IMG/VR virus record: IMGVR_UViG_3300022745_000017
Span: 124,001 to 188,000 of that record
Direction: 5' to 3' (one strand)
Length of the DNA stretch: 64,000 nt
Position numbers and translations under genes: made by a program. Positions 2,482 to 16,072 of this stretch are shown in pieces. The notes beneath the pieces are model-generated. The model ran no database searches. It was not told where the DNA came from and saw nothing but the letters and a program-made list of their open reading frames with translations. Positions within the stretch are counted from its first letter, which is position 1; the number at the start of each line of letters is the position of its first letter.

Positions 2482-2489
2482 GCTGCTGA

Positions 2490-2534: not shown

Positions 2535-2552
2535 ATTCGATCCTAGAAAATC

Positions 2553-3058: not shown

Positions 3059-3076
3059 CATTCGAGATATAGACAA

Positions 3077-3151: not shown

Positions 3152-3607
3152 ATGGACCATAAACAAGTCCTCAGAATTCTCCAAGGTAAGCCTAACTACG
3201 TGCCAGGCTACCCTTTCGCAGGACAGTTCACTGTCATGGAGCCATCTCCTGACTTGCCCTCCCGTGAGTTGTTCTTTGCGGACGAGTCTGGTAGCGTTAA
3301 GCTGCTTGCCTCATTTGCTTCGTGCAAATACAAAGGTAGCCGTATTCTGTTTGACCGTGTAGAGTTTGAGTGGCGTGAGGTGACACCACCCTCACAAGCC
3401 CTACGATTCCTGCACAGCTTTGAGCCTCTTAAAGATGGTGTCTTAGACTTCCTGATCATGGCCCCGTCAGTGCGTCTGTACCGGCTCGACACCACACGAG
3501 CTGTCAAGCACATCTCTCCTATCGGCAAGGTGGACAAGCTGTTCATCAAGCTAGATAGTAGCTGGGACAGCACTGACGCTTTCATCATCACTCGCGTAAT
3601 GGCCTAA
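3152..3607 (+). CDS. hypothetical early protein
   Basis: ATG 3152 after AAGG SD; terminator downstream. Confidence 0.75.
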   Translation: MDHKQVLRILQGKPNYVPGYPFAGQFTVMEPSPDLPSRELFFADESGSVKLLASFASCKYKGSRILFDRVEFEWREVTPPSQALRFLHSFEPLKDGVLDFLIMAPSVRLYRLDTTRAVKHISPIGKVDKLFIKLDSSWDSTDAFIITRVMA

Positions 3608-3740
3608 CCGGGTCACTACGCGAGGAGAAGCACCTGCGGGTGCTTTTTCTTTTTGTCGATTCTATTTTATCACAGCACCATATCACTTGAGTAGTCATGG
3701 CGCAGTGCTATGACCTTCTTAGCTTAGAAAGGCTACTATC

Positions 3741-4238
3741 ATGTTCAAGAATATCGTGGGTATTTTGCTGGGGTTGGTGCTCTGTATTTTGGTGAGTGCC
3801 TGTGGGCAGAGCAAGCCGCCCGAGATCCCTGTGGTCGTGGCAGCCAGTGCACCCGAAACCAAGGTCAAGGTAGTGCCTTACGAGACGTGGAGCAAGAACT
3901 CTGCGGCCAGTCGTGACAACCTCACCATCAACGCCAACGCCTACCGATCCAGTTCTGCGCGTTTGAAGGGCTACAACTTCATTGACCGGGCGGACTCCAC
4001 GATTGGCTCCAAGTGTTCGGTTGGTCATGGCTGGGCTGAAGTCATCTTCACCAAAGCGGATGAAGAAAAGAAAGATGCCACAGGCAACCCCGTCATCCAC
4101 CGTATCTCGGTGTGGTGCAGCACGTTTGACAAGTCTCGCGGCTGCATGTTGGACGACGTGTTTCGCAAGTCGAACTACACCACCGAGGCGCAAGAATGCC
4201 AAGACGGTAAACTGCCTGACCCCCTGCCGCGCATCTGA
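3741..4238 (+). CDS. putative lipoprotein
   Basis: signal peptide ending LVSA-C lipobox; several further Cys. Confidence 0.7.
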   Translation: MFKNIVGILLGLVLCILVSACGQSKPPEIPVVVAASAPETKVKVVPYETWSKNSAASRDNLTINANAYRSSSARLKGYNFIDRADSTIGSKCSVGHGWAEVIFTKADEEKKDATGNPVIHRISVWCSTFDKSRGCMLDDVFRKSNYTTEAQECQDGKLPDPLPRI

Positions 4239-4239
4239 C

Positions 4240-4356
4240 ATGTTCACCATCCCTACCTTCTTGGCCAACATCGGTGCCGCTGTCGTGGTGACTGCCCTCT
4301 TGGGCACTGGCGGTGTCGTGGGTTGGTACGCCCATAAGTACCTGGGTAAGAAATAA
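4240..4356 (+). CDS. 38-aa single-TM peptide
   Basis: MFTIPTFLANIGAAVVVTALLGTGGVVGWYAHKYLGKK; starts 1 nt after lipoprotein stop; hairpin follows. Confidence 0.6.
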   Translation: MFTIPTFLANIGAAVVVTALLGTGGVVGWYAHKYLGKK

Positions 4357-4422
4357 GCCCTGGACAGTGTGTACGGTTAACACCCGTACACACTGTCTAA
4401 CCACTCTCATTGAAAGATTTTT

Positions 4423-5205
4423 ATGCGCAGACTCACTCAACAACAAGCTCATGTCCATCAATACTTCGATGGTCGCACACGTCTTTTCATCACGAAAGAT
4501 TCCCTAAGCTCTGAAGATTCTCGTATCCAGGTCTATCGCGGCGTGATCAAAACCATTAGCATTGCCACAACAAACCAGGACGGCACTCCCAGTAAGAGAG
4601 CAATTGCCCACTACGAGGCTGTCGTAGAAAATGTGGGGTCTATATTTACAACAGTACTCTTGTCAGAGCAATTAGACAGTCTTGAGCGCGGGATTATCTG
4701 GAATACCAATCCTAACACAGTACACGATCTTAACAGTCGCTTCTTTGTGTCTGCAAAGCAAATCGCCATGTGGAGACCGCAGCAAGAGCGAATCCGTTTC
4801 TACGAGTCCATATGTCTGAATCACAAAGATTTGGTCACTTTGCATGGCTTTGATCTGTTGTACCTAGATCAGATCAAGAAGATCCAGAACTCCGGCTTGA
4901 GTGGGGCGTATGCGCCTATTGAGAAACACGAAATAGGTACGTTGACCAAGGCTGCTCGGCAAAACAATCCAGGAATCGATTCATCTTTTTGGACTGAAAA
5001 CAATGTGAAACCGGGCCACAATATCAGTGACACCTCTCTCACATTGGTCGACGAATCGGGGTTTGGTATCTTTAGCATTTTCAAGATCACAGACGATACC
5101 TACACGTTGGAGGAAGCCTGTGATGGATGCTACACGCGTGACTTCACCAAGCGACAACTCATCGAGCAACTGCGCAGCGCAATCAACTGGATTGAAAGAC
5201 AATGA
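4423..5205 (+). CDS. hypothetical protein
   Basis: 260-aa ORF coupled to next gene. Confidence 0.7.
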   Translation: MRRLTQQQAHVHQYFDGRTRLFITKDSLSSEDSRIQVYRGVIKTISIATTNQDGTPSKRAIAHYEAVVENVGSIFTTVLLSEQLDSLERGIIWNTNPNTVHDLNSRFFVSAKQIAMWRPQQERIRFYESICLNHKDLVTLHGFDLLYLDQIKKIQNSGLSGAYAPIEKHEIGTLTKAARQNNPGIDSSFWTENNVKPGHNISDTSLTLVDESGFGIFSIFKITDDTYTLEEACDGCYTRDFTKRQLIEQLRSAINWIERQ

Positions 5206-5582
5206 AACCACAACCTCCCGAGAGCTCCTATGTGCGAGATGAAGAGATAGAGGTAAAGCCGCCTCTACCTCCAAAACCGCTACCACCAACCCGGCCTAAC
5301 AACAGAGTGACTGAGACAGGATTCTCTTCATTACCACCCCAATTAGTAGCAGTCATCCTTGTGGCTGTTATATTGCTGTTTATCTTACTGATGGTTGGAG
5401 CAGAAAAATCTGATCGCCATGTGTACCCTATACGAGTCGACGTAGTTGAGAGACTACCTGATAGTCAACCAGGTATGACCTGTGACAAATACACTGAGCG
5501 CAGATGTAAGGACGCCAGTCAAACAGAATGTGTGGTCTGGGGATCACCACGGATATCTTGCTACCAGAGGAGTGCCAAATGA
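5202..5582 (+). CDS. membrane-anchored protein with Pro-rich N-terminus and 4-Cys C-domain
   Basis: TM segment LVAVILVAVILLFILLMVG; ATGA overlaps on both sides. Confidence 0.7.
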   Translation: MKPQPPESSYVRDEEIEVKPPLPPKPLPPTRPNNRVTETGFSSLPPQLVAVILVAVILLFILLMVGAEKSDRHVYPIRVDVVERLPDSQPGMTCDKYTERRCKDASQTECVVWGSPRISCYQRSAK

Positions 5583-5989
5583 ACAACCCGGCAATAGAAG
5601 AGCAGTTGCACAGCTTCGAAAAACAGATTAAAAATACCCTCAAAGTAGTTGCTAACGCAGATGGCTACAGCGAAGATGGTTGGTCTGGCGTACATCCGGC
5701 AGACCGACAAAAGGTCGCTGATGTTTTGCTAGGCGGTATCGCCTCTCTAAAAGCCATATATGCAGCAGCTCAGCATGGTCGCACTAACACCGTCGATGAG
5801 CTCCGTGAAAAACTAATGCTGGGTTGGAGCACTACCAAGTATGAGTTTAAATCGTCCTACGACACAGTTCGACATTACCGGGACCTCGCTACTTGTCTGG
5901 AGTCTCAGATCTGTATCTTTAGCTGGACAGTTTCAAAAAGCGGTGAGATTGATAATACACTAGGTGCACGCACCAGGTTGGCGTCTTAA
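5579..5989 (+). CDS. hypothetical protein
   Basis: GAGGAG SD, ATG 5579. Confidence 0.75.
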   Translation: MNNPAIEEQLHSFEKQIKNTLKVVANADGYSEDGWSGVHPADRQKVADVLLGGIASLKAIYAAAQHGRTNTVDELREKLMLGWSTTKYEFKSSYDTVRHYRDLATCLESQICIFSWTVSKSGEIDNTLGARTRLAS

Positions 5990-6000
5990 CCCAGTTTTCT

Positions 6001-6081
6001 TCAGTCACATATATCAATGGTGAGTCTTTGATGGTGTTAAAGGACTCACCTATCTGAAACATACACCCTGGAGTATTTATC
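6001..6081 (+). promoter_or_regulatory. promoter motif + pseudoknot leader copy 3
   Basis: TCAGTCACATATA; stem 6019-6029/6040-6050; GGTGT 6033-6037 pairs ACACC 6063-6067; SD GGAG 6070. Confidence 0.8.
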
Positions 6082-6510
6082 ATGCGCAAGTCCAACAGCA
6101 ACCCCGCCGACACATACATTCGCCTGATGGAGGCGGCCTCCTTAGCGAAAGCCATCTGCATTGCGATCTATGGGTCGGTGGAGAATTTCCCGAAAGACTG
6201 GGGGACAAACCTGGCGAAGTACCCTCGGCTTGCCCAATGGAAAGCTCTGCGGAGCAAGGCCGCCGACGCGGGCGAGAAGCTCTTGTCTGAGCATAAGGGG
6301 CCGGATAAACAGCGAGAGCTGTTTGTCCACTTCATGATCTACAAAGGTGACACCCTGGTGGACAAAATGGCTGCTGTGCGGTTGACGCACATTGTGAAGC
6401 CCAACACTGAAACGGCGGGGCTACTCCACATCCCAGTGGAGCACTTAGGTGCGCAGCAGCTCCAAGCCGAGCTGAACCTGTTCTTGGACACCCACCGGAT
6501 CTACGTGTAA
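6082..6510 (+). CDS. hypothetical early protein
   Basis: SD + ATG; terminator 6523-6568. Confidence 0.8.
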   Translation: MRKSNSNPADTYIRLMEAASLAKAICIAIYGSVENFPKDWGTNLAKYPRLAQWKALRSKAADAGEKLLSEHKGPDKQRELFVHFMIYKGDTLVDKMAAVRLTHIVKPNTETAGLLHIPVEHLGAQQLQAELNLFLDTHRIYV

Positions 6511-6522
6511 GTCTGGTGGGCT

Positions 6523-6568
6523 AGCTACGGGTGGGCCTCGGCCCACCCGTAGCTGCTCTTTCTTTTTT
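6523..6568 (+). terminator. intrinsic terminator
   Basis: AGCTACGGGTGGGCC-TC-GGCCCACCCGTAGCT + T-tract. Confidence 0.8.
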
Positions 6569-6639
6569 GTTTCGATTCATCTACACCCACATATCACCTA
6601 CGTGGTCTAATCTAGACTATCACTGTGAGAGTACTTATC

Positions 6640-7830
6640 ATGATCAATACGCAATCCCTGATGGAAAACTTGCAAAATGGCAAGACCGTCTACCGTGTCG
6701 GCTTTCGCTATGATCAAAACAGCAAGCAACCCATCTACAAGCTGTTCGAAGTCATTGGTTACCGAGCCGTGGTGGCCATGTCGCACACAGCTATTCACTC
6801 ATCTGTTCCAATGCCTGAGGTTAAAATGGCAGCGATCTTGAAAGGATCGTGCGAGCAAGACATCTATATCCTTGGTGGGCGACCTTCTAAAACGGATGGG
6901 GTCGAGACATGGATGATGATTTATGGTCGCTCCATCTGTAGTAACCATTACGACATTACCCGAGAGAAAGATCATGGTGACATCTGGTTTGAAGTACAGA
7001 TGTACGCTAACCTCACCTACGACAGTGAGCTGATGATCGGGGCTATCAAAGCGTTCCCCCAGGCTTGGCAAGCTGTGCCGGATGAGCTGTTGGGCGCTGC
7101 TTATTGCCTGAACTGCTACGCAGACGAGACACCTATTGATTTCGAACTCCTGAAAGCCCTGCGCAGCGGGGATACCGTGTCTGAAAAACTGGTGATCAGT
7201 ACGAAAAGCTGGGATGGTGGCCATCCCACTGACACACCTAAGGCTTATAACAAACAAGGCCTGGTGGTTACTGACCCATTTGGTCGGAGCAGCCCCACTG
7301 ACATGAGCGTCGTTCCGGCAGGGAAATTCAACCGTGCTGGCCCTACGGGGGATGGTAAGGAGTATTCCCATCACGCTTGGGTCAATCGCTTGCCTGGCTT
7401 GGTGCCTTCCTCACAACACGCATCTGCGCCCAATACCTTCAAGTGTACAGATTGCGTGCAACAAGTGACCATGTTTTGCCCAGGTGATCATAGCGGTTGT
7501 CCGAATGATTTCCGAGGTATTCGTGAGGCCATGGCTGTCGTCGCTGAAATAAATGAGTCGCCAGCCAGTGGTGAAGATGTAGGGGTTGAATCGCCGGCAG
7601 AAGTGTCTGCGTTTGCTGCGCAGCATCGCTTCGATTGTCCCACCACTTTAGAGCAGGCGCGTGAAAGCGCTGATAACCAAAGACCGGTGGTCGCGGGGTT
7701 GAGCGCTTTCTTCGATCCATCAAAAGCTTACGAGGAGGCAAATCTGAAAACTGATGAGCTGCCGCGTCAGGAGTCTAGTGATACCTCATCGCAAAGCGAC
7801 ACATCGACGCCCGATACATCCCAGGACTGA
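6640..7830 (+). CDS. hypothetical protein, paralog family A
   Basis: shares FP..W....Y.L..Y.DE motif with 8674 and 9545 ORFs; Ser/Asp-rich tail. Confidence 0.75.
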   Translation: MINTQSLMENLQNGKTVYRVGFRYDQNSKQPIYKLFEVIGYRAVVAMSHTAIHSSVPMPEVKMAAILKGSCEQDIYILGGRPSKTDGVETWMMIYGRSICSNHYDITREKDHGDIWFEVQMYANLTYDSELMIGAIKAFPQAWQAVPDELLGAAYCLNCYADETPIDFELLKALRSGDTVSEKLVISTKSWDGGHPTDTPKAYNKQGLVVTDPFGRSSPTDMSVVPAGKFNRAGPTGDGKEYSHHAWVNRLPGLVPSSQHASAPNTFKCTDCVQQVTMFCPGDHSGCPNDFRGIREAMAVVAEINESPASGEDVGVESPAEVSAFAAQHRFDCPTTLEQARESADNQRPVVAGLSAFFDPSKAYEEANLKTDELPRQESSDTSSQSDTSTPDTSQD

Positions 7831-7896
7831 TTGAACCCCAGTACACTAGGTGAGGGTCTACTCACCTAGTGTACGTCCTCTATCTCGGAGTTTTAT

Positions 7897-8208
7897 ATGG
7901 AAGTTTTCACACCTCCGGCTATCGGTAGTCATTTTGTTGGCTTTAAAGGCCCTCAGACTCCCGATAATACGTTTACTTTTAAGCGCTTTACAGTAGTTGG
8001 CTATGTGCCGATGATGTGCGCGTTTGAAATAGGCGTAAGACAGATGCAAGGCTTGCACTTGCAAGACGAAGAAAAGGTCGATTACTACCAGGCTGGCACT
8101 TGGTTACAAGATCAACAAATCTGGTTCTACCGGGTTTGTCCTACTGGCTGCGCCGGGCCTTCAGTGATACAGACAAAAGACGGTAGCGACATCTGGTTAA
8201 CCCAATAA
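7897..8208 (+). CDS. hypothetical protein, paralog family A (short duplicate)
   Basis: closely similar to 8229..8660 (GLHLQDEE.VDYYQAGTW). Confidence 0.75.
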   Translation: MEVFTPPAIGSHFVGFKGPQTPDNTFTFKRFTVVGYVPMMCAFEIGVRQMQGLHLQDEEKVDYYQAGTWLQDQQIWFYRVCPTGCAGPSVIQTKDGSDIWLTQ

Positions 8209-8228
8209 ACCCTGTACTTGGAGTTTTT

Positions 8229-8660
8229 ATGTCAATTTTCAAACAACCGTCTATCGGCAGTCGCATCATTGGCTTTAAACGCCTCGCGCTGCCTGACAAT
8301 ACTTATACCTTCAAAATCTTCACAGTGGTTGGCTATGTGCCGATGCTCTATGAAAATATGCACACGGTATGTCCGGATGAGGGCCTACATCTGCAAGACG
8401 AAGAGCAAGTCGATTACTACCAAGCAGGTACGTGGGTGCCAGATCAACAAACCTGGTACTGCCAAGAGCATCCAGTAGAATACGCGGGTCGTTTTCATAT
8501 ACAGACCAAAGGTGGTACAGACATTTGGACAAATGCCTTACCATATATCGCCAACAAAGAATACAATTGGCAAGGGCTAACCCAAGCTATTGTATTTCGC
8601 AGCCCTCAGGAAATCAAAACCCTGGTGGATGGCCACATTCATTTCGTAGATATCGATTAA
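8229..8660 (+). CDS. hypothetical protein, paralog family A
   Basis: P.IGS..IGFK...FTVVGYVPM; GGAG SD. Confidence 0.8.
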   Translation: MSIFKQPSIGSRIIGFKRLALPDNTYTFKIFTVVGYVPMLYENMHTVCPDEGLHLQDEEQVDYYQAGTWVPDQQTWYCQEHPVEYAGRFHIQTKGGTDIWTNALPYIANKEYNWQGLTQAIVFRSPQEIKTLVDGHIHFVDID

Positions 8661-8673
8661 AGGAAACTATCAC

Positions 8674-9459
8674 ATGCCTAAATACCTGCACCAGGTCATT
8701 ATTCATCCCGAAGATCTATCCAACATTGTCAACCTCCAACCAACTCAAGCGGTCTTGGACTTTGGCTATGACGATTACATGAACCAGATACCAGCACCGG
8801 CTATTGGCGCTAAGCGTGTGGCCGTCATGTTGACTGAAAAAGGAGAGTGGTTTAATAAAGTCATCACGGGGGTTGACTACAGAGTATTGACTGTGACGGA
8901 GTACACGCACGTCAAAGCGGTTAACCTAGGTGACAAGAGATCGATTTCACCGTCTATCATGAACAGTAACTCTCGGTATCCTATCTACACCGATAGTGAA
9001 GGGCTCGCTTACATCCCTGGTGGCAACAGCATCTTCGGTCGTGAAGGTGAATACCTGTTGTATGGTCGTCACAACACCCTCAGCAGCTGTGCAGTGCTCA
9101 AGGTGGTAAAGAATGGTGAAGTCATTGGTGAGGCCGTTGAAGTCCAAGCTGTTGATTTCAACTGGTATCAAAATGAATTCAAAAACATAGCGATGGTGTT
9201 GTTCCCAGAGGTCTTTCAAGAGATCGATCATGCCCACATGGACTATGCTTATAACCTGCCGCTCTACATCGACGAGCCGGCAGTAGACATCGAAGCTATC
9301 TTGAAACAAAAGGCCCCTGAGCTGGCAGGAAAATCCTCAGGAGTTAAAGGCTTCAAGCGCCGTGGGCTCAAATCCTACTTTTTAGAGCGCCCTACCATCA
9401 GGCCTAACGTGGTTGGGTGGCAAGACGTTACAGCGATTTTAGACACTGAATTAAGCTAA
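8674..9459 (+). CDS. hypothetical protein, paralog family A
   Basis: PAIGAKRVA...LTV; NLPLYIDEP. Confidence 0.8.
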   Translation: MPKYLHQVIIHPEDLSNIVNLQPTQAVLDFGYDDYMNQIPAPAIGAKRVAVMLTEKGEWFNKVITGVDYRVLTVTEYTHVKAVNLGDKRSISPSIMNSNSRYPIYTDSEGLAYIPGGNSIFGREGEYLLYGRHNTLSSCAVLKVVKNGEVIGEAVEVQAVDFNWYQNEFKNIAMVLFPEVFQEIDHAHMDYAYNLPLYIDEPAVDIEAILKQKAPELAGKSSGVKGFKRRGLKSYFLERPTIRPNVVGWQDVTAILDTELS

Positions 9460-9544
9460 GGCACACAAACCCCTATACTCACTCTAGCAGTGCCTTAGTG
9501 GGCCTGCTAGAGTGGTTTAAACACGTTTTAAAGAGGTATTTCAA

Positions 9545-10222
9545 ATGAATCAAGTCAGCAGTGAAATTGATCTAGTCACCCGACTGCGTTATCCTCTGGC
9601 ATCCATCGGCGCTAAGCGCATTGTCGCCAGTATCCCTGATAGTGAAGATCAGCTACGTGGACAAGTCGAGTTTCGTGAACTCACAGTGACGGGCCATCTT
9701 GACTGCCAGATTGATTATCACAGTCCTACAGATAAAGAAAGTCCGGTGCAGATGGGTAGAGTCCTTACAAAGAAATGGAAAGGTCTCATCTACTCTGATC
9801 AGCAAGGACGGGTGTACTGGCAGTGTGGTAGCTTGCCTGATAAGGATGGCAATGATGGCTATGTCTTTGACTATGGGAATGTCATCTTTCACAACGCATC
9901 AAGCGTCTGGGAGTTAGTGGATGGTAAACCCACTCACCTGCACTGTGAGGTGCAAGGCATTAGCTACTACATGAATGATGCTGTCTTCAAGATGCAAGCC
10001 ATGGCAGCCTTCCCTCATGTGTGGCATGACACCCCTAAGGCTTTGTGGCACTACAGCCATAACCTACCTCTCTACATCGATGAGCCTGTGCATGACTACA
10101 GTCAGTACACTTCTGAGATGAAGAGCGGTATGGACCTGGGTAAGCTCATCATCCCCGATGCAGCTAACCTGGTAGTCTCAGGAGTATTGACGCTGAGACT
10201 ACCAGGTTACGATGAGGATTGA
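9545..10222 (+). CDS. hypothetical protein, paralog family A
   Basis: SIGAKRIVA...LTV; NLPLYIDEP. Confidence 0.8.
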   Translation: MNQVSSEIDLVTRLRYPLASIGAKRIVASIPDSEDQLRGQVEFRELTVTGHLDCQIDYHSPTDKESPVQMGRVLTKKWKGLIYSDQQGRVYWQCGSLPDKDGNDGYVFDYGNVIFHNASSVWELVDGKPTHLHCEVQGISYYMNDAVFKMQAMAAFPHVWHDTPKALWHYSHNLPLYIDEPVHDYSQYTSEMKSGMDLGKLIIPDAANLVVSGVLTLRLPGYDED

Positions 10223-10870
10223 TAGGTGAGGATTAGGGTGGTTTAAGGAGGGGAGTAGGGAGATTTCATATTTCAAAAGAAAGAAGAAAGAGAGAAAAGT
10301 CTCTCCTCCTTCCTCCCTCTTCTTTCTTCTTCTTCTCTCCTCTTTCCTCTTCTTTCCCCCTTCCCCCTATCTCTCCTCTCCTTAAACCTCTCCTCTCTAT
10401 CCCCCTACCCCCAATCAACTCCTATCACCTCTCATCATCATCAATCATCTCCCTCCTACCTCCTCTCCAAAAGAGAGAAAGTAGAAAGAAAAGAAATAGA
10501 TAAACAAGAGTTTTTCACTCACACTATTAGGAGGTAGAAGTTGGTTATTAAAAAGAGGATAAGTAGGTAGTAAGTAAGACAATACAAAGAAGTGTTTAGA
10601 GCAATCTCTGATTGCTCTAAAGGAGCCCAATAACAAACGAAAAAGCTTTTATTTTCCTTTAGGTAGGAGTAGGTAGTGACTCGTAGGGTAGTAGGTATAC
10701 ATGCGTAACTACTTATCCCTACATTGTTTTTAATACTGCTTTTAAGTTAATAGAGTACACGCGCGGGCGTGTGCGCGCGTTTATAATTGATAAGGAGTGT
10801 AAAAATATAACAGATAGTACATATTAACCAAACGAGTCTTTTATATGTGTAACCTTTCCTTAGTCAAACC
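10223..10870. repeat. low-complexity polypurine/polypyrimidine non-coding island with long imperfect inverted repeat
   Basis: near-pure C/T tract ~10300-10400 flanked by A/G tracts; GGTTTAAGGAG 10240-10250 / CTCCTTAAACC 10378-10388; no credible ORF. Confidence 0.8.
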
Positions 10871-10881
10871 GGAGAATAGCT

Positions 10882-11658
10882 ATGACACACGTTAACTTGC
10901 CCTTTGAGAAGCTTTGCGCTAAGCAGCGCTTAGACCTCTATCGCAGTCTCAACATCAGCTTACAGAGCATCTGTAAGTTTGTCATCACGGACGACTTTGG
11001 TTTAACCATTGTCAACCCTGAGCCTTACTACGTCAAGATGCGTCGTCAGCTCAAAGAGCCTCACGCCTGGCAAGACATCAATCTCAACAAACACAAGGAC
11101 AACTACTCCATCATCTTGAACATGAGCATCATCCTAGCTCTCAAATACTTGGGTGTGAGCGCACCTACAGTAACCCTAGACCATGATACTTATGGCAAAG
11201 CCCAAGCGGTGGCTGTTGGGATGTTTTTGCGATACACGAAAGTCATGAGCAGTTTGTCTCTTTACAACGAGGCGATCATCAGTGGAGCCAATTGGGCGGA
11301 GGTCTATATGTTTTGTTGCCGCCCCAGTATTAGCTTCACTGCGAACAAGCCTTTAGGTGACCAACTAAAAGACCTCAATAGCTACATGGTCTATACGAAT
11401 ACAAATATGGAAAAGTTAAAGCCCGAAGACATTGGTTTGGTGGATGGTAAGGCTAAAGCGTTTTTCTATCGGTATGGCTATTGGGAGTTAAGTAGGATAT
11501 CAACTAAGTTTTTGTCGGGTGACACTGTGCGCACGAAGGTGACCCGTGAGGCACTTGATAAGCTCAATGTCAGGTTAAATGTGACGGCCGCCGAGGTCCG
11601 GACTATGCTTGAATCTGAGTACAACCAGGCAAAACAACCATCTCCCAAAAACATTTAA
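10882..11658 (+). CDS. hypothetical protein adjacent to non-coding island
   Basis: 258-aa ORF, GGAG SD. Confidence 0.8.
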   Translation: MTHVNLPFEKLCAKQRLDLYRSLNISLQSICKFVITDDFGLTIVNPEPYYVKMRRQLKEPHAWQDINLNKHKDNYSIILNMSIILALKYLGVSAPTVTLDHDTYGKAQAVAVGMFLRYTKVMSSLSLYNEAIISGANWAEVYMFCCRPSISFTANKPLGDQLKDLNSYMVYTNTNMEKLKPEDIGLVDGKAKAFFYRYGYWELSRISTKFLSGDTVRTKVTREALDKLNVRLNVTAAEVRTMLESEYNQAKQPSPKNI

Positions 11659-11717
11659 CCACATATCCCCTACCTGGAGTCAAGTGACTCCAGTCGCCCC
11701 CCAATCAAGGAACCCCT

Positions 11718-12392
11718 ATGGAAAACACGGTCAAGAAATCTGAGACTACCAACTACAACGTCGGTGACAAGATCGTCATCTGCTCAACTGCCCTTAAGCA
11801 CCCAGGTTACCATGAGCACATCCGTGATCTCAACGATGAAGGCAAACCAGAGCTCGCTGCTTTTGCAGCCTATGACTATTGTCAAGCCACCATCACCAAG
11901 ATCACCCATAGTGAGAACGAAGGCCATACCCACCTCCAAGTAGAGGCTGTCATCCTCGAAGACAACCTCGTTTTCATCCAAGAGTCCTTTAGCCATAAGC
12001 CTACCATGGGTGGACAAGCCCGCTGGCGTCTACAGACAACCGAAGGTGTGGACTACACCAAAGGCGAAGATGGCGTGGTCACCCCTTGTGGGCGCTTTCA
12101 AGACTTTACGCCAGTTGAGTTTGCACTGCGTCACTGGTGGCGCGATGTGAGCTTCATGGACTGGGGCCCAGCCCTCATGGTGGCATGGGGTCAGATGTGT
12201 GTGCAAAACTGGCCGGACTTGTTTACGCTGTGTGAGCAAATCGCTGACCCTGAGGTCTTGCAAATCCCTGAGATGCTCGACCAAGAAGAAACCCATCACT
12301 ACGAACTCACAGGGCCACAGTACCATAACCAGCAATGTGTGGCTTGTCAGCTCACAGCGCACTTTCAAGCCGACAAAGCGTTTGTAGTTTAA
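11718..12392 (+). CDS. hypothetical protein
   Basis: AAGGA SD, CACATATC-N7-TG promoter motif at 11660. Confidence 0.8.
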   Translation: MENTVKKSETTNYNVGDKIVICSTALKHPGYHEHIRDLNDEGKPELAAFAAYDYCQATITKITHSENEGHTHLQVEAVILEDNLVFIQESFSHKPTMGGQARWRLQTTEGVDYTKGEDGVVTPCGRFQDFTPVEFALRHWWRDVSFMDWGPALMVAWGQMCVQNWPDLFTLCEQIADPEVLQIPEMLDQEETHHYELTGPQYHNQQCVACQLTAHFQADKAFVV

Positions 12393-12401
12393 GGATTAGC
12401 C

Positions 12402-12890
12402 ATGAAGACGTTTCTCAGTGCCAGAACGCGCTTAGCCCTATTTAACCCAGAAGGCCAAGTCCTACTGATGGTCAGGGGTTCAAAGCACCTAGGCATTCTC
12501 TTGCCTCCGGGTGGTGGAGTTGATGCATCAGAAGACTTCGATGCCTCGATGCAACGAGAAGTCCAAGAAGAAATACAGCTTCCGGACGACGCAGTTATCT
12601 AGGACTACGAAGTCAAGTACAGCCACCGCTTACCTCAGCACATCGGTGCGTTTGAGAAGCACTACTTCCACACACAGCACCCGAACATCATCACCTTTGC
12701 AAAGTGGTATGTCGCCAGGACTAAACAGCCCGAACAAGTCACTCTCAGAGAACCAGAGAAGTTTTGCTTACACGCTTGGTTCCACCCGCACCAAATCCAC
12801 CCCTTTGCCATAAAACACGGCTTTGACATCGGAGACGGTGTTGAGCAAATCGCCAAAGCGTATGACTACCTGCTGAGCCTGGAGATTTAA
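12402..12890 (+). pseudogene. Nudix hydrolase interrupted by in-frame TAG (12600-12602)
   Basis: Nudix box PGGGVDASEDFDASMQREVQEE; frame continues 95 codons after TAG with REPEKF..HAWF motif to TAA 12890. Confidence 0.75.
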
Positions 12891-12901
12891 ACCAGATTCT
12901 T

Positions 12902-12979
12902 TCAGTCACATATATCCGGAGATGAATCGGCGATGATGCTGACTGGTTCATCTCTTTAACTGCATCAAAAGGAGTTACT
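12902..12979 (+). promoter_or_regulatory. promoter motif + pseudoknot leader copy 4
   Basis: TCAGTCACATATA; stem 12919-12930/12943-12954; TGATGC 12934-12939 pairs GCATCA 12962-12967; SD GGAG 12971. Confidence 0.8.
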
Positions 12980-13438
12980 GTGGTTGACCTCGGTGATAAT
13001 AGCAGCTTCGGGCTGCCTCGTGTCCTGACTTGTGTCACACAGGTCATGCAAGCGCTTGGTTTTGAATACCGCCTGCGTGGCACCCCCAGGGTGCGGATCG
13101 TCATGGAAATAGGTAAAAGTGGGGTCTTGGCTGGTTACAGCCATAAGGACAACACGATATACCTTACCTTAGGGGCCCCAACAGCCGCTATGTGGCATGA
13201 AGCCGTGCACGCGGGGCAACCTGATGCCGAGCATGTGGACTACTACACCTCTCTGGGCGTCATAGACCAAGAGCTCTATTCGACATCCCGAACCGAGCAG
13301 GAAGCGCGCGCTGTGACTGCTGTGTACTACCTAGCCCGCAAGCTAGGTAGTCTGGACGAGGCAATTGCGAAAGCGGTAGCTTGCCAGAAGAAGACTAGCT
13401 TGGGCAACTTAGAGCAAGCCATATCAGCTTGTATCTGA
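12980..13438 (+). CDS. putative zincin-like (HExxH) metallopeptidase
   Basis: MWHEAVHAGQ plus downstream TEQEARA. Confidence 0.65.
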   Translation: MVDLGDNSSFGLPRVLTCVTQVMQALGFEYRLRGTPRVRIVMEIGKSGVLAGYSHKDNTIYLTLGAPTAAMWHEAVHAGQPDAEHVDYYTSLGVIDQELYSTSRTEQEARAVTAVYYLARKLGSLDEAIAKAVACQKKTSLGNLEQAISACI

Positions 13439-13443
13439 GCGAG

Positions 13444-13498
13444 ATAGTCGAGAGGTGTGCTGTACAGCACACCTCTCGACTATAATCTATTTTTCTTT
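13444..13498 (+). terminator. 40-bp perfect palindrome + T-tract
   Basis: ATAGTCGAGAGGTGTGCTGT|ACAGCACACCTCTCGACTAT. Confidence 0.75.
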
Positions 13499-13571
13499 GG
13501 TAACATATACCAGCAGTGAGTCTAAATGATGCTAAGGCTCACTATCACTAACTGCATCTAGGAGATGGATT
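13499..13571 (+). promoter_or_regulatory. promoter motif + pseudoknot leader copy 5
   Basis: GGTAACATATA; stem 13515-13523/13535-13543; GATGC 13528-13532 pairs GCATC 13554-13558; SD GGAG 13561. Confidence 0.75.
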
Positions 13572-14000
13572 ATGACCTATTTGGCATTTGTGTTATCAGA
13601 CAAGACACGTTCTCGACTGATGGCTAAGCATGGAGTCGTGGAAGACCCGGCGACAAAGGTCTACGTGCACCACGTCACAATTGACTTGACGTGGGGTGCT
13701 ACGACTGCGCATGAGTCTCGTGCGGCATACTTAAACCGTATGCAGGAGACAGAAGGCCTCCGGGTGTATGCATCCGAAAACAAGGTCAGTGCACCTAATG
13801 GAGAGACGGTCTTTGCCAAGATCGTTTTCGAAGGTGTGGACACTCTGCGCTCCACCGCAGGCCCACTCCACATCACCCTCTGGGTACTCAAACCCCTGCC
13901 TGCAAAAACAGGTAGACTCATCGCTGAAGAAGCGCTGAGTAAGTTCGATGGTCAATGGGACCCAATCCCGCTGACCGGATCTTTTCAAGTGTTAAACTAA
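13572..14000 (+). CDS. 2H phosphoesterase / cyclic phosphodiesterase
   Basis: two HxT motifs (HHVTI, LHITL) about 65 aa apart. Confidence 0.7.
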   Translation: MTYLAFVLSDKTRSRLMAKHGVVEDPATKVYVHHVTIDLTWGATTAHESRAAYLNRMQETEGLRVYASENKVSAPNGETVFAKIVFEGVDTLRSTAGPLHITLWVLKPLPAKTGRLIAEEALSKFDGQWDPIPLTGSFQVLN

Positions 14001-14011
14001 AGGAGACAATC

Positions 14012-14347
14012 GTGGAATTTAATGATATCAAGGTAGTGACTGAGCAAGCCACTGTATACTTCAGCGTGGTGGATGACCGCGTAGTAGCCGGAATTACCTT
14101 TGATGGCAAGCCGGCTTTCCCCATGTCAGCTACAAAGGCTGTGCTGGCAGAGATCAGGGATAGACTTGAGGAGGCATGCTCAGATGGTTCTTATGGTCCC
14201 TTCGCTAGTTCCTTCGAGGATGTTTGGAAGGTATTTCCAGGCACTCATTATACAGCGCGTCTGAAGACAGCGATCGGCCTGGATTACGCTGGCTGGAGCG
14301 CTTGTGTGGAAGGCATGAGCAATGTATTCATGTTCAGGTTCGGTTGA
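14012..14347 (+). CDS. hypothetical protein (family C)
   Basis: AAGGAG SD + GTG; G..GP...FEDVW motif shared with 15277 ORF. Confidence 0.7.
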   Translation: MEFNDIKVVTEQATVYFSVVDDRVVAGITFDGKPAFPMSATKAVLAEIRDRLEEACSDGSYGPFASSFEDVWKVFPGTHYTARLKTAIGLDYAGWSACVEGMSNVFMFRFG

Positions 14348-14414
14348 GCTGACGTGAGGGAAATAAGAGGGCATACACCAGTCCTCTTATTTTTCTTTTA
14401 GAATGTAGTTTATT

Positions 14415-14492
14415 TCAGTCACATATAGCGACAATGAGATTGCAATAGTGCTAGTGATCTCATATACCAACTGCACTTTAGGAGTAATGAAA
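14415..14492 (+). promoter_or_regulatory. promoter motif + pseudoknot leader copy 6
   Basis: TCAGTCACATATA; stem 14434-14443/14454-14463; AGTGC 14447-14451 pairs GCACT 14473-14477; SD GGAG 14481. Confidence 0.8.
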
Positions 14493-15109
14493 ATGGAATT
14501 CGAATACATGGAGTTTGAGGAGACTGTGTCAAATACCCATATGGTGGCCCAGATGATGGGCTATCTCGGCTATGAGGTCGAAAGGGGTATCGATATGCCG
14601 ATCATCCGAGTGACTGACGAGTATGTCGGACACGCTGCCGATTGGCGACTGGTGAACGGCAGGATAAGCGCCATCACAATGTATGCTGGGCGCTGCGAGA
14701 GCTCATTGTGGCACGAGCTATGCCACCACCACCAACCGATTCTCCGGCAAGGTGTAGACCCATCATACTACCGTGAAGACGGCAGTATGGATGAGGCCGC
14801 ATATGCCGCCGACCCAGTAGAGTGCCAGGCTCGCGCCGTTGGCATGCTGGCAGTAGCTGCTAAGATACATGGGGAGCGGCGCGCTGTCGACATGGCCCTG
14901 ATAACCAGGGCTGTCCTCGGAGCCGACCCACTCCATCATGAGTTGTTCATAGCCACGCTCACCGGCTTGAAAGCTCTCTCTCTCTGTATCATGCGGAGAA
15001 GTTAGCTGTGGAGCGCCTTGATAGAGGCGATGATGTGGGTAGTTTATGCGAGGCTATCACGGCAGCCGATGAAAAAAGAGCCAAAGCACGTCGAGCAGGA
15101 CAATCCTAA
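14493..15109 (+). CDS. HExxH metallopeptidase-like paralog, frameshifted at (CT)6
   Basis: LWHELCHHHQP, VECQARAV; as written stops at 15005, removing one CT extends it to TAA 15109 with a tail matching the 12980 paralog. Confidence 0.6.
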
Positions 15110-15199
15110 GAAAGCATAAACCAAACCCAACTAACCTACCTGTAAAACGGTAGGTTAGTTGGGCTGAGTAATGTGTTTTCTTTTGTATCCTATTTTTCT

Positions 15200-15276
15200 T
15201 CAGTCACATATATCGTTGGTGACTTGGCAATGGTGCTAGTCAAGGCATATCTTTAATTGCACTTAGGAGATTGATT
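15200..15276 (+). promoter_or_regulatory. promoter motif + pseudoknot leader copy 7
   Basis: TCAGTCACATATA; stem 15220-15228/15239-15247; GGTGC 15232-15236 pairs GCACT 15259-15263; SD GGAG 15266. Confidence 0.75.
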
Positions 15277-15654
15277 ATGACACACCACGCAGCAGTATAT
15301 GAGATCACCGGATTCTTTGATGGTCAGCTGGACGGTGTAGTGGATTTTGCAGGGCTCACAGCCCTGCAAAATCCAGCACTGTTAGCAGCCGGCTTGAAAG
15401 CCGGCACAGCGGCTTGTGGCCGCACAGAGAAGGCCCTGTGGGCCATCGCCCTCAAGGAGGGTAGACTGTACCTCACCGTGGCGGGTGAGGTCGCCCAGCT
15501 AACCAAGGAGACGTGGCCTCCGGTTATCTGGGCGGTTAGTGAGCATCTGGCTCCGATCCCGCCGGAAGGCGTGGTTGGGCCGGATGTCTTTGAAGATATC
15601 TGGCACCGCATCGGTGCTCCAGTTATCGAAGGAGGGCAACATGTTCTCCATTGA
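15277..15654 (+). CDS. hypothetical early protein (family C)
   Basis: SD + ATG 15277; GVVGPDVFEDIW. Confidence 0.75.
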   Translation: MTHHAAVYEITGFFDGQLDGVVDFAGLTALQNPALLAAGLKAGTAACGRTEKALWAIALKEGRLYLTVAGEVAQLTKETWPPVIWAVSEHLAPIPPEGVVGPDVFEDIWHRIGAPVIEGGQHVLH

Positions 15655-16072
15655 TAACTGGACAGCAGAGCAGCTAAAGGATGCTGCTCTGCTGAAGGCG
15701 GGAGTGTTGTGGGAAGGCTTCTGCAAAGAGCCTCCCACAATACCGACCACCTGGCGACACGGTTGGGAGATCAAGTCAATCTTGATCCCCGGCCAGCAAG
15801 ACCCGGCCGGTGCTGAGAAGTACAGACTGGTCATAAAGCCCAAGTCTGCTGAGAACAGGCAGATTTGGCAACAAGGCCAGGTGGACTTCTTTGCTAAGCG
15901 GGGCTTCACGCCAGCGCAAGCAAAGCACCTGGCCACTAGCCGGTGGCCCTGTAAGCACGAGCTGGCTGAGGCCACTGTCAAGTACCTGCGCACCGGCAGG
16001 ATCAGCTCTTGCCTGAACCAGCGAAAAGCAGAGCTGGTCAAGCGGCTCTGTAAGGAGCTCGCTGTTTTATAA
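15641..16072 (+). CDS. hypothetical protein
   Basis: GGAGG SD before ATG 15641. Confidence 0.75.
   Translation: MFSIDNWTAEQLKDAALLKAGVLWEGFCKEPPTIPTTWRHGWEIKSILIPGQQDPAGAEKYRLVIKPKSAENRQIWQQGQVDFFAKRGFTPAQAKHLATSRWPCKHELAEATVKYLRTGRISSCLNQRKAELVKRLCKELAVL

What the first reader, a model, noticed from the sequence alone, without database searches (positions are those of the whole stretch)
10223..10870. 650-bp non-coding island with segregated purine/pyrimidine tracts and a ~200-bp imperfect inverted repeat
Seen: the longest gene-free stretch in the window. It contains a G/A tract, ~100 nt of almost pure C/T, further A/G tracts, nested inverted pairs (TGATAGG 10220/CCTATCA 10421; GGTTTAAGGAG 10240/CTCCTTAAACC 10378), an imperfect hairpin ~10683-10722 and an isolated CGCGCGGGCGTGTGCGCGCG patch in AT-rich DNA (~10760-10780). 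Inference: triplex/cruciform-prone DNA; candidate replication origin, packaging or genome-anchoring site, or ncRNA.
Basis: partly seen in the sequence, partly recalled or inferred. Interest (0 to 1): 0.65.

Follow-up and report, generated by a model that had tools for sequence, protein, structure and literature searches.

The report
Conserved purine/pyrimidine non-coding island in jumbo phage
The largest gene-free stretch of an uncultured nucleus-forming jumbo phage is a real, strain-conserved and compositionally extreme non-coding element (a 173-base stretch without any G, folded against purine arms and followed by terminator hairpins); it most likely makes an untranslated RNA, and a role in DNA replication is not excluded.

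Summary
Window 10223-10881 is 659 bp without a credible gene. It is the largest such gap in a 218-kb chimallivirus-like (phiKZ-type, nucleus-forming) freshwater phage genome.

The island holds several genome-wide extremes:
- a 69-nt pure pyrimidine run;
- a 173-nt G-free stretch (next longest 50), flanked by the two longest C-free stretches;
- the only C5-N2-C5-N31-C5-N2-C5 cluster (G-quadruplex/i-motif type);
- two of the four most AT-rich 100-nt windows;
- the densest GTAGG repeat cluster.

The left purine arm pairs with the pyrimidine core far better than composition-matched shuffles (z about -4.7). Mirror symmetry, which H-DNA needs, is not above chance.

It is not an assembly artefact. 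In a sister strain the core 10252-10624 differs by about 1%, against 3.5-8.6% in the flanking genes. Three rightward terminator-like hairpins follow the core. No Rfam family, tRNA, consensus early promoter or homologous locus was found, and 58 relatives lack it; one has an analogous island.

Best reading (about 0.4): a rightward-transcribed untranslated RNA or leader unit ended by phiKZ-type terminators. Main rival (about 0.2): a transcription/R-loop-type replication origin. No RNA data were available.

The parts
10165..10209 (+). Perfect 17-bp hairpin (11-nt loop) inside the last 58 nt of ORF 9545-10222. It is of the long-stem type that follows most genes in this genome.
   Evidence: -30.5 kcal/mol, z -6.4. 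The sister strain carries 3 third-codon-position changes in the left arm; two become G-U pairs and the hairpin persists (-23.1, z -4.0).
10211..10266 (.). C-free, G-rich purine arm. It is the left arm of the long inverted repeat and one of the two longest C-free stretches of the genome.
   Evidence: The sister strain's differences cluster here, at 10218-10253.
10267..10271 (+). CATAT in a 9-nt AT spacer. It is only a weak match to the phage's early-promoter core, but it lies at the left edge of the strain-conserved block.
   Evidence: low PWM score; the difference-free run starts at 10252.
10275..10299 (+). 25-nt pure A-rich polypurine tract. It pairs with 10313-10339.
   Evidence: I5, I7, I13; one of only three such tracts on the + strand of the genome.
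10300..10472 (+). G-free C/T-rich core of 173 nt. Its first 69 nt (10300-10368) are pure pyrimidine. It contains the genome's most extreme GC-skew window.
   Evidence: 0 G and 52 C per 100 nt.
10356..10412 (.). C5-TT-C5-N31-C5-TA-C5 cluster: i-motif type on the + strand, G-quadruplex type on the - strand. It is the only four-run C4+ motif in the genome.
   Evidence: All third-party contigs end or start within 10366-10408.
10211..10436 (.). Long imperfect inverted repeat (nested helices): purine left arm against pyrimidine right arm, with about 35 extra nt on the right arm.
   Evidence: Retained in a sister-strain composite, which borrows window letters for the 41 nt missing from the sister contigs (-72.7 against -73.5 kcal/mol).
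10468..10594 (+). Second A-rich purine block. It includes a polypurine tract at 10468-10500, a C-free stretch at 10525-10579, and a 71% AT window. It is not specifically complementary to the core.
   Evidence: The sister strain shows 2 mismatches and 1 one-base deletion in 125 nt.
10595..10621 (+). Perfect 12-bp hairpin with a 3-nt loop. It marks the right edge of the strain-conserved block.
   Evidence: z -3.6. Invariant in the sister strain.
10663..10731 (+). Terminator-like hairpin followed by a T5 run (10727-10731). It is decayed in the window strain and a near-perfect 22-bp stem in the sister strain. It carries four GTAGG copies.
   Evidence: window -22.7 kcal/mol, z -0.9; sister -40.7, z -7.0. 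Five clustered substitutions at 10704-10717. GTAGG counts.
10759..10784 (+). GC-rich 7-bp hairpin followed directly by TTAT, the phiKZ-type terminator signature.
   Evidence: The sister strain has an A>G change plus a 2-nt deletion; on reading the aligned sequences these appear to lengthen the stem to 8 bp, and the tail becomes TTATG. Motif from PMC10914365.
10785..10881 (+). AT-rich (71%) upstream region of ORF 10882-11658. It contains TACATATTAAC (10818-10828; one mismatch within the 10-nt promoter core, and the downstream N5-TGA element is absent), TATG (10844-10847) and the Shine-Dalgarno GGAG (10871-10874).
10843..10849 (-). Exact CACATAT promoter core on the minus strand, pointing into the island. 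Its flanks do not fit the consensus, so it is probably a chance match.

Best explanation
The island is a discrete, lineage-specific non-coding transcription unit read rightward, like all neighbouring genes. Transcription would enter by read-through past the hairpin at 10165-10209, or start at a weak promoter near 10267. It would produce an untranslated RNA of roughly 350-500 nt.

The A-rich purine tract (and the G-rich arm, if it is included in the RNA) would fold back on the first part of the pyrimidine core into a long hairpin. That would leave about 80-100 nt of G-free C/U-rich RNA single-stranded.

The RNA would end at the stability hairpin 10595-10621 and/or at the two terminators, 10663-10731 (stem plus U5) and 10759-10784 (GC stem plus TTAT). 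Only a fraction of transcripts would reach ORF 10882, which also has its own weak promoter-like site.

Functionally this would be either a leader/ncRNA made by premature termination, as mapped for 17 5'UTR-derived RNA candidates in phiKZ, or an early-expressed decoy RNA whose C/U-rich tail binds purine-rich (GGAG-type) sequences or pyrimidine-binding proteins.

Shown: non-coding status, extreme composition, specific arm complementarity, strain conservation, and the orientation of the terminator signals.

Inferred: that it is transcribed, the transcript ends, and any RNA-level activity.
For: 1. All flanking genes are on the + strand. Both flanking ORFs evolve like real genes, with substitutions mostly at third codon positions.
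2. Three hairpins downstream of the core carry their terminator tails (U5, TTAT) on the + strand only. Stem-loop plus TTAT is the conserved phiKZ terminator motif (PMC10914365).
3. The block conserved between strains runs from 10252 to 10624, that is, from just before the CATAT spacer to the end of the first perfect hairpin. It shows 2 substitutions and 1 indel in about 300 covered nt, against 3.5-8.6% in the flanking ORFs.
4. Hairpin complementarity exceeds composition-matched shuffles (z -4.7). It survives 8 changes in the sister strain's left arm; read by eye from the alignment, one A-U pair of helix 10240-10255/10373-10388 becomes G-U and one G-U becomes A-U. Only 12% of random equal-sized mutation sets keep the same stability.
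5. The GC hairpin changes in the sister strain in a way that, read from the alignment, lengthens its stem.
6. The island sits in an early-type region: 12 of 27 CACATAT promoters lie between 121 and 146 kb, amid ORFans. That is where accessory host-takeover functions are expected.
7. phiKZ produces abundant short intergenic and 5'UTR RNAs bounded by terminators.
8. One distant relative has a roughly 700-nt non-coding Y-R-Y island directly upstream of a consensus early promoter.
Against: - No RNA data exist: no RNA run holds the locus.
- There is no consensus early promoter on the + strand inside the island. The CATAT at 10267 is a poor match.
- If transcription starts near 10267, the outer helices (10211-10255) would lie outside the RNA. 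That conflicts with using their conservation as RNA evidence.
- Only two lineages are available, so covariation is anecdotal. Difference-free runs of 100-190 nt also occur in the flanking genes, so a recent recombination tract could mimic constraint.
- An RNA role does not by itself explain the strict C-free/G-free/C-free segregation, the C5 cluster, the AT-rich blocks or the GTAGG repeat density.
- No Rfam family matches.
Confidence: 0.4

Rival explanations
1. Replication origin of the transcription/R-loop type. Transcription through the strand-asymmetric core would leave a stable purine-rich RNA:pyrimidine DNA hybrid. That hybrid would be stabilised by a G-quadruplex on the displaced strand (G5-TA-G5...G5-AA-G5). 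The adjacent AT-rich blocks would unwind, the GTAGG repeats would bind a phage factor, and the RNA 3' end would prime DNA synthesis, as at T4 ori(uvsY)/ori(34), ColE1 or mitochondrial CSBII.
For: - It is the largest non-coding region of the genome.
- It has the most extreme GC-skew window and a 173-nt G-free stretch.
- It has the unique C5x4/G5x4 cluster.
- It has two of the four most AT-rich 100-nt windows.
- It has 9 GTAGG copies against 0.96 expected, the densest such window in the genome.
- It has retroviral-PPT-like A-rich purine tracts.
- It lies inside the 132-141 kb support interval of a third-codon-position skew breakpoint. The overall skew range exceeds all 300 gene-order shuffles.
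- An exact CACATAT core points leftward into the core from 10849.
- Origins are typically lineage-specific.
Against: - A G-rich RNA over the core needs leftward transcription, and the only leftward promoter-like site has non-consensus flanks.
- By the bacterial convention (leading strand rich in G and T) the 136-141 kb switch would be a terminus, with the origin near 22-26 kb.
- The second breakpoint is ambiguous (about 21-22 kb or about 209 kb), so the skew may instead mark a gene-module boundary.
- There is no recognisable initiator. The neighbouring proteins are strict ORFans with no usable fold.
- The locus lies in a hypervariable region with no synteny to the closest relative.
- GTAGG-rich stems are also common in this phage's ordinary terminators.
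- The analogous island in relative G036 is not near that genome's skew extremes.
Confidence: 0.2
2. Ordinary intergenic punctuation plus selectively neutral simple sequence. The right third is simply tandem terminators and the promoter/5'UTR of ORF 10882. The R/Y part is an expanded low-complexity remnant with no function of its own.
For: - The hairpins and the AT-rich upstream region resemble the roughly 74 terminator hairpins and the promoter regions found elsewhere in the genome.
- The tracts show short-period repeat structure.
- The island is absent from 9 cultured and 49 uncultured relatives and from the closest relative.
- It sits in an ORFan region of rapid turnover.
Against: - Slippage-prone tracts should diverge fastest, yet this is the most conserved stretch between the strains (0-1% against 3.5-8.6%).
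- Arm complementarity is far above the composition-matched expectation.
- Strict G-free and C-free segregation over 173, 56 and 55 nt is not what repeat expansion alone produces.
Confidence: 0.15
3. A DNA-level structural site other than an origin. Examples are a polar replication-fork or transcription barrier (terminus-like), a recombination hotspot, or a binding array for a phage DNA-binding protein, acting through cruciform, G4/i-motif or purine-pyrimidine DNA.
For: - Cruciform-capable palindrome (DNA fold z -3.0).
- G4/i-motif cluster.
- Proximity to the skew maximum, which is terminus-like by convention.
- GTAGG array.
- Every low-coverage assembly breaks at the C5 cluster, as expected if polymerases or sequencers stall there.
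Against: - The palindrome is imperfect, with a 35-nt asymmetry, so extrusion would be costly.
- Mirror symmetry for H-DNA is at chance.
- The G4 would need a 31-nt central loop.
- The contig breaks may simply reflect low complexity at 4-7x depth.
- No candidate binding protein was found.
Confidence: 0.1
4. A Rho-type terminator: the C-rich, G-free RNA would act as a rut-like loading site for a termination helicase. This is a special case of rightward transcription.
For: On the + strand RNA there are 173 nt with 85 C and 0 G within 10300-10468. From textbook knowledge, not tested here, this is the classical rut composition. Termination-prone hairpins lie downstream.
Against: Chimalliviruses transcribe with their own RNA polymerases inside a protein shell. 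Host Rho is not known to reach those polymerases or act on them. Part of the tract is sequestered in the hairpin.
Confidence: 0.05
5. A hidden small protein gene or an assembly artefact.
For: Open frames of 50-92 codons exist because pure R/Y tracts lack stop codons. There is also a 9-codon ORF with a perfect AGGAGG Shine-Dalgarno sequence at 10529-10570.
Against: The frames are low-complexity, lack start and Shine-Dalgarno context, and lie on both strands. A second assembler reproduces the sequence exactly at depth 107, and other samples carry both halves of the island.
Confidence: 0.03

Closest known systems
phiKZ 5'UTR-derived and intergenic ncRNA candidates made by premature termination (ONT-cappable-seq, PMC10914365)
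   Same: Same virus family type, with chimallin and two multisubunit RNA polymerases. A non-coding stretch lies upstream of a gene and is closed by stem-loop terminators with a TTAT tail.
   Different: Those RNAs are 71-196 nt with mapped 5' and 3' ends. Here about 350-500 nt are inferred without RNA data, no consensus promoter was found, and the purine/pyrimidine segregation has no counterpart in phiKZ.
R-loop/transcription-primed origins: T4 ori(uvsY)/ori(34), ColE1 RNA II, mitochondrial CSBII (from general knowledge)
   Same: A strand-asymmetric G/C tract able to hold a stable RNA:DNA hybrid, G-run clusters, adjacent easily melted AT-rich DNA, and a non-coding location in a lytic phage that has its own RNA polymerase.
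   Different: No promoter of proven type faces the right way. There is no evidence of initiation, and the skew polarity points to a terminus rather than an origin.
Iteron plus AT-rich origins (lambda ori, plasmid oriV types; from general knowledge)
   Same: A short motif (GTAGG) repeated 9 times next to AT-rich blocks and a GC-rich clamp.
   Different: The repeats are 5-8 nt rather than 17-22 nt. They are irregularly spaced and partly form hairpin arms, and no initiator gene is adjacent.
H-DNA-forming homopurine-homopyrimidine mirror repeats
   Same: A long homopyrimidine-homopurine duplex (69 nt pure).
   Different: The defining mirror symmetry is not above chance.
Non-coding Y-R-Y island of IMG/VR contig IMGVR_UViG_3300043754_000129 (G036:105,700-106,370)
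   Same: A distant relative (36% DnaB identity) that uses the same promoter consensus. It has a roughly 700-nt gene-free stretch with about 60-nt pyrimidine tracts and a G-rich purine block, next to an early-type promoter.
   Different: There is no sequence similarity. The order is inverted (Y-R-Y rather than R-Y-R), the tracts are T-rich with interspersed G, no complementary arms were seen on reading the sequence (no fold was run), and it is not near a skew extreme.
Phage T5 injection-stop-signal region (from general knowledge)
   Same: A large non-coding region of a virulent phage packed with direct and inverted repeats.
   Different: The T5 site depends on a fixed genome end. This genome assembles as circular or permuted, and no shared motifs were seen.

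Membership tests
Any Rfam RNA family (including introns, riboswitches, sRNAs) | Covariance-model score at or above the family's gathering threshold | tested here: not met
   The best hits are eukaryotic miRNA/snoRNA models at 17-27 bits against thresholds of 60-100. These are low-complexity hairpin noise.
tRNA/tmRNA | ARAGORN-detectable cloverleaf | tested here: not met
   none in the whole window.
Intrinsic / phiKZ-type terminator | Stable stem-loop followed on the transcribed strand by a U-run or TTAT | tested here: met
   10759-10780 plus TTAT, and 10663-10722 plus T5 (near-perfect 22-bp stem in the sister strain, z -7.0). Motif. Function was not assayed.
Phage early promoter of this lineage (C[AC][CT]ATAT[C/A]AC-N5-TGA) | Match to the consensus found upstream of at least 27 genes | tested here: not met
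   No + strand site in the island scores like the genuine sites. There is a core-only match on the - strand at 10843-10849, and a core with one mismatch at 10818-10828.
H-DNA (intramolecular triplex) element | Homopurine-homopyrimidine tract | tested here: met
   69-nt pure pyrimidine run.
H-DNA (intramolecular triplex) element | Mirror-repeat symmetry of the tract | tested here: not met
   The best mirror arms are 8-14 nt, equal to or below shuffled C/T tracts.
G-quadruplex / i-motif motif | Four runs of at least 3-4 G (or C) with short loops | tested here: inconclusive
   There are four C5 runs with loops of 2, 31 and 2 nt. It is unique in the genome, but the central loop exceeds the canonical limit of 7 nt. 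Folding was not measured.
Cruciform-forming inverted repeat | Arm complementarity above chance | tested here: met
   The repeat is imperfect, with a 35-nt arm asymmetry. Extrusion was not testable.
Iteron/AT-rich replication origin | Repeated binding motif plus an AT-rich unwinding element | tested here: inconclusive
   GTAGG occurs 9 times against 0.96 expected, and two 71% AT windows are present. The repeats are short and also typical of this phage's terminator stems.
Iteron/AT-rich replication origin | Adjacent initiator gene and coincidence with the skew minimum | tested here: not met
   The neighbours are ORFans without a usable fold. The island lies near a skew maximum, not a minimum.
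R-loop-primed origin (T4 oriF/oriG type) | Promoter reading into an unwinding element, and a persistent RNA-DNA hybrid | not testable with these tools
   Only composition could be assessed. Promoter evidence is weak.
Packaging (pac/cos) site | Location at or next to the terminase genes, or at physical genome ends | tested here: not met
   The large terminase gene is at genome 27.9-30.2 kb and the island at 134.2 kb. The 127-bp end overlap is consistent with an assembler overlap. Read termini were not available.

The most novel reading that the evidence does not exclude
The island is the replication origin (or one of several) of a nucleus-forming jumbo phage, and works through a G-quadruplex-stabilised R-loop on a 173-nt G-free/C-rich template flanked by AT-rich unwinding blocks. 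This would be a type of origin not described for Chimalliviridae; two literature searches here found nothing on such tracts or origins in jumbo phages, and a third for phiKZ with origin/GC-skew terms listed no directly relevant title among the 12 of 768 shown.
Probability: 0.15. Interest if true: 0.8.

Novelty: new variant of a known kind. Interest (0 to 1): 0.5.

Why it matters
Nucleus-forming jumbo phages separate transcription and replication from the cytoplasm, and their cis-acting DNA and RNA elements are almost unmapped.

This locus concentrates several genome-wide extremes in 660 bp: the G-free and C-free stretches, the only G4/i-motif cluster, AT-rich blocks and a repeat array. It is also kept nearly unchanged between strains whose neighbouring genes differ by 4-9%. 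That makes it a well-defined, cheap-to-test candidate for one of two things:
- an early non-coding RNA with an unusual G-less C/U-rich platform;
- an R-loop-type origin.

Either result would add a new kind of element to chimallivirus biology.

If it instead proves to be neutral simple sequence plus ordinary terminators, it still shows how such tracts break low-coverage assemblies. Every low-coverage third-party assembly examined here has a contig end inside or at the edge of the island, five of them within 10366-10408.

Tried and rejected
- Homology of the island. blastn against 50,697 phage records found nothing. Exact-motif scans of IMG/VR and JGI metagenomes returned only the source contig. 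A short-word blast against its own genome gave only chance 11-14-mers.
- Synteny. Both flanking proteins have no relatives except the sister strain: Pfam and PHROGs, tblastn against phages, the word search, the exhaustive representative search for the downstream protein only, and IMG/VR. The closest relative by DnaB (43% identity) shares no gene between 100 and 146 kb.
- Folding the downstream protein gave pLDDT 35, which is unusable. The ESM Atlas gave no reliable lead.
- Protein-coding reading: rejected.
- Group I/II intron or any other Rfam family: rejected.
- H-DNA design: rejected.
- Right purine arm pairing with the core: rejected (z -0.6).
- CsrA-type GGA sponge: rejected on a hand estimate. 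About 10 GGA on the + strand against about 9 expected from base composition, so no enrichment.
- The similarity of the A-rich purine tract to genome 25,937-25,969 is explained there as the pyrimidine-rich 5'UTR of the tail-sheath gene on the other strand. It is not a second island.
- Four of the five Y-tract hits in relatives are short 5'UTRs or coding sequence.
- RNA evidence: no RNA run holds the locus. Read laying returned contigs only, so transcript ends, read termini and true depth could not be read.
- The chimallin word search found only the protein itself.
Full report
**Context**

The window is bases 124,001-188,000 of a 217,973-bp IMG/VR virus contig from a freshwater metagenome. Its ends overlap by 127 bp, which looks like an assembler overlap of a circular or permuted genome.

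The genome encodes a nuclear-shell (chimallin) protein, several multisubunit RNA-polymerase beta-type subunits, a tail sheath, a large terminase and a DNA polymerase. It also encodes a DnaB helicase 35-38% identical to those of Ralstonia, Burkholderia and Xanthomonas phiKZ-like phages. It is therefore a divergent nucleus-forming jumbo phage. About 92% of it is coding, almost all on the + strand.

**The observation**

Between ORF 9545-10222 and ORF 10882-11658 lie 659 bp without a credible gene. Both ORFs accumulate substitutions mainly at third codon positions.

Ignoring low-complexity pseudo-frames, this is the largest gap in the genome. Segment by segment, the island reads:
- a C-free, G-rich purine arm (10211-10266);
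- a 9-nt AT spacer with CATAT;
- a 25-nt pure A-rich purine tract (10275-10299);
- a 173-nt G-free core (10300-10472), whose first 69 nt are pure pyrimidine;
- a second A-rich purine block containing another long C-free stretch (10468-10594);
- three hairpins (10595-10621, 10663-10722, 10759-10780);
- an AT-rich region upstream of the next gene.

The next longest pure purine or pyrimidine run in the genome is 21 nt, and the next longest G-free stretch is 50 nt.

- The core holds the only C5-N2-C5-N31-C5-N2-C5 cluster in the genome.
- The island contains the most extreme GC-skew window and two of the four most AT-rich 100-nt windows.
- GTAGG occurs 9 times against 0.96 expected, the densest such window in the genome.

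**Is the inverted repeat real?**

Yes, for the left arm. Shuffling each arm separately, which keeps the purine/pyrimidine segregation, gives -54.6 +/- 4.0 kcal/mol against the observed -73.5 (z -4.7). The minus strand gives z -4.0. With DNA parameters against dinucleotide shuffles z is -3.0.

The right purine block is not specifically complementary (z -0.6). Mirror symmetry of the pyrimidine tract is at chance, so nothing suggests selection for H-DNA.

**Artefact and conservation**

A second assembler (Logan) reproduces 9000-12500 exactly in a 10.5-kb contig at depth 107. It comes from what is probably the source sample, so it uses the same reads and is not independent data.

Other samples hold the phage or sister strains at 3-7x. 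Their contigs carry both halves of the island, but in every such sample a contig ends inside or at the edge of it, five of them between 10366 and 10408, that is, in the C5 cluster.

In the sister strain, divergence is as follows:

| Segment | Covered nt | Differences |
|---|---|---|
| Flanking ORFs | - | 3.5-8.6% |
| 10223-10253 | 30 | 4 mismatches, plus 3 indels |
| 10254-10367 | 113 | 0 |
| 10408-10468 | 61 | 0 |
| 10469-10594 | 125 | 2, plus a one-base deletion |
| Hairpin 10595-10621 | 27 | 0 |

Differences resume from 10625. The conserved block is thus about 10252-10624. A caveat: difference-free runs of 100-190 nt also occur inside the flanking genes. With only two lineages, a recent recombination tract cannot be excluded.

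**Structure-related changes between strains**

- Five clustered substitutions (10704-10717) make the right arm of the second hairpin a perfect complement of 10663-10682 in the sister strain. The result is a 22-bp stem (-40.7 kcal/mol, z -7.0) followed by U5. The window strain carries a decayed version (-22.7, z -0.9). This looks like quasi-palindrome template switching.
- The GC patch is a hairpin followed directly by TTAT. In the sister strain an A>G change and a 2-nt deletion appear, on reading the alignment, to lengthen the stem, and the tail becomes TTATG.
- Read by eye from the alignment, helix 10240-10255/10373-10388 keeps all its pairs in the sister strain through an A-U to G-U change, a G-U to A-U change and a one-base bulge. 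The partner arm 10373-10388 is not in the fetched sister contigs; its constancy is inferred from difference counts of a contig that reaches 10387.
- A composite sister sequence, which uses window letters for the unsequenced 41 nt, folds as well as the window (-72.7 against -73.5). Only 12% of random, equally sized C-free mutation sets do so. This is weak evidence.

**Transcription signals**

A motif CACATAT(C/A)AC...TGA lies 14-90 nt upstream of at least 27 genes. It is shared with a distant relative. It matches the description of jumbo-phage early promoters as a conserved AT-rich element of about 10 nt (PMC7598289). Twelve copies carry a conserved structured leader, and 12 of the 27 sites lie at 121-146 kb. 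The island therefore sits in an early-type ORFan region.

No + strand site in the island scores like a genuine promoter. A core-only match on the minus strand (10843-10849) has non-consensus flanks; roughly one chance intergenic hit of this kind is expected genome-wide.

Seventy-four perfect hairpins with stems of at least 11 bp exist, mostly just after stop codons. Many are followed by TTAT/TATG(CC) or a T-run, like the phiKZ terminator motif 'stem-loop plus TTAT' (PMC10914365). In the island the terminator tails are on the + strand only.

**Replication signals**

Whole-sequence and third-codon-position skews switch near 22-26 kb and 136-141 kb. The GC3 skew range exceeds all 300 gene-order shuffles. 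A likelihood scan places one breakpoint at 132-141 kb, which includes the island, but leaves the other ambiguous (about 21-22 kb or about 209 kb). By the bacterial convention the 136-141 kb point would be a terminus. The skew may equally mark a boundary between gene modules.

**Relatives**

- Nine cultured chimalliviruses have no purine or pyrimidine tract of 40 nt or more (the window's own genome served as positive control).
- Among 50 uncultured relatives found with a DnaB profile, none with comparable GC content has a G-free stretch of 90 nt or more.
- Five of them have a 40-nt pyrimidine tract. Four are short 5'UTRs or coding sequence.
- One (G036, 324 kb) has a roughly 700-nt gene-free stretch: two T-rich pyrimidine tracts of about 60 nt flank a G-rich purine block, directly upstream of a consensus early promoter. 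This is analogous, not homologous, and it is not at a skew extreme.
- The closest relative by DnaB shares no gene with 100-146 kb of this genome and has no such island.

**Interpretation**

The right third of the island is ordinary for this phage: tandem rightward terminators plus the upstream region of ORF 10882. The unusual part is the conserved block 10252-10624.

I consider a rightward non-coding RNA or leader unit the best-supported reading (about 0.4). The reasons are:
- the orientation of every termination signal;
- the coincidence of the conserved block with 'spacer to first hairpin';
- the early-region context;
- the documented abundance of terminator-bounded 5'UTR and intergenic RNAs in phiKZ.

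Its weak points are the missing promoter, the absence of RNA data, and the fact that an RNA role does not explain the strict base segregation, the C5 cluster or the AT-rich blocks. Those features are what an R-loop/G4-type origin would need, so that rival keeps about 0.2 despite the unfavourable transcription direction and skew polarity.

The remaining readings are less likely:
- neutral simple sequence (about 0.15), which is hard to square with the conservation and the specific complementarity;
- other DNA-structural roles (about 0.1);
- a Rho/rut-like site (about 0.05);
- coding or artefact (about 0.03).

**Verdict**

This is a real, statistically extreme and strain-conserved non-coding element, specific to this lineage and of undetermined function. 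Its hairpin and terminator anatomy is established. Transcription, RNA function and any replication role are inferences.

Noticed in passing
genome-wide; in the window e.g. 2558, 3078, 6006, 6588, 11660, 12907, 14420, 15205, 21744, 32969, 37403, 41219: A promoter-like consensus CACATAT(C/A)AC-N5-TGA lies 14-90 nt upstream of at least 27 genes. It is probably the virion-RNA-polymerase early promoter. The same consensus occurs in a relative with only 36% DnaB identity (G036).
   Followed up: partly
window 2490-2640, 5940-6090, 12840-12990, 14350-14450, 15140-15290, 21680-21830, 32900-33040 (plus 5 copies outside the window): Twelve copies of a cassette of about 110 nt: a T-rich stretch, TCAGTCACATATAT, then a conserved leader of about 60 nt that visibly contains paired segments (GTGAG...CTCA, GATGC...GCATC) ending at the Shine-Dalgarno sequence. 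This looks like a shared structured 5'UTR for a gene class.
   Followed up: partly
genome-wide; window e.g. 961, 3001, 6523, 7841, 13444, 25960, 33760, 37331, 63298: There are 74 perfect hairpins with stems of 11-19 bp, mostly right after stop codons. Loops are often CTAG, GTAA or TTAC. Eight are followed immediately by TATGCC, resembling the published phiKZ terminator motif (stem-loop plus TTAT).
   Followed up: partly
window 10704-10717 versus L003:296-309: Five clustered substitutions between strains convert a decayed hairpin arm into a perfect complement of the opposite arm. This is the signature of quasi-palindrome template-switch mutation or gene conversion.
   Followed up: yes
window 10529-10570: A perfect AGGAGG Shine-Dalgarno sequence lies 6 nt upstream of a TTG start and a 9-codon ORF inside the conserved purine block. 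It is identical in the sister strain, and its significance is unknown. Leader-peptide attenuation seems unlikely where transcription and translation are physically separated.
   Followed up: no
window 11740-11751 and 11802-11816: The start of ORF 11718-12392 contains the same 12-mer as the arm of hairpin 10165-10209 (CTGAGACTACCA), and a 15-mer 93% identical to 10202-10216. This may reflect a shared ancestry of the two gene ends, or a repeated hairpin.
   Followed up: no
genome 139-140 kb and about 209 kb (window about 15,000-16,000 for the first): Third-codon-position GC and keto skews of + strand genes shift sharply. The 140-209 kb block, which holds the nucleotide-metabolism and replication genes, has about twice the negative GC3 skew of the rest. 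This is either a replication signal or a difference in expression class.
   Followed up: partly
genome 25,922-26,202 (outside the window): A 281-bp divergent intergenic region with 37% GC holds the most AT-rich window of the genome. It also holds the only other A-rich polypurine tract, which read on the other strand is a pyrimidine-rich 5'UTR of the tail-sheath gene. It lies 0.5 kb from the GC3-skew minimum, so it is an alternative origin candidate.
   Followed up: partly
L124:1300-2040 (G036:105,630-106,370, minus strand): A distant relative carries a gene-free stretch of about 700 nt, in this order: a C-rich G-poor block, two T-rich pyrimidine tracts of about 60 nt around a G-rich purine block, then a consensus early promoter.
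   Followed up: partly
window 1-16,000 (genome 100-146 kb more widely): All nine proteins of this stretch that were scanned (ORFs between 6625 and 15005) have no Pfam or PHROG match, and no gene between genome 100 and 146 kb has a homologue in the closest known relative. This is a hypervariable early-type accessory region.
   Followed up: partly
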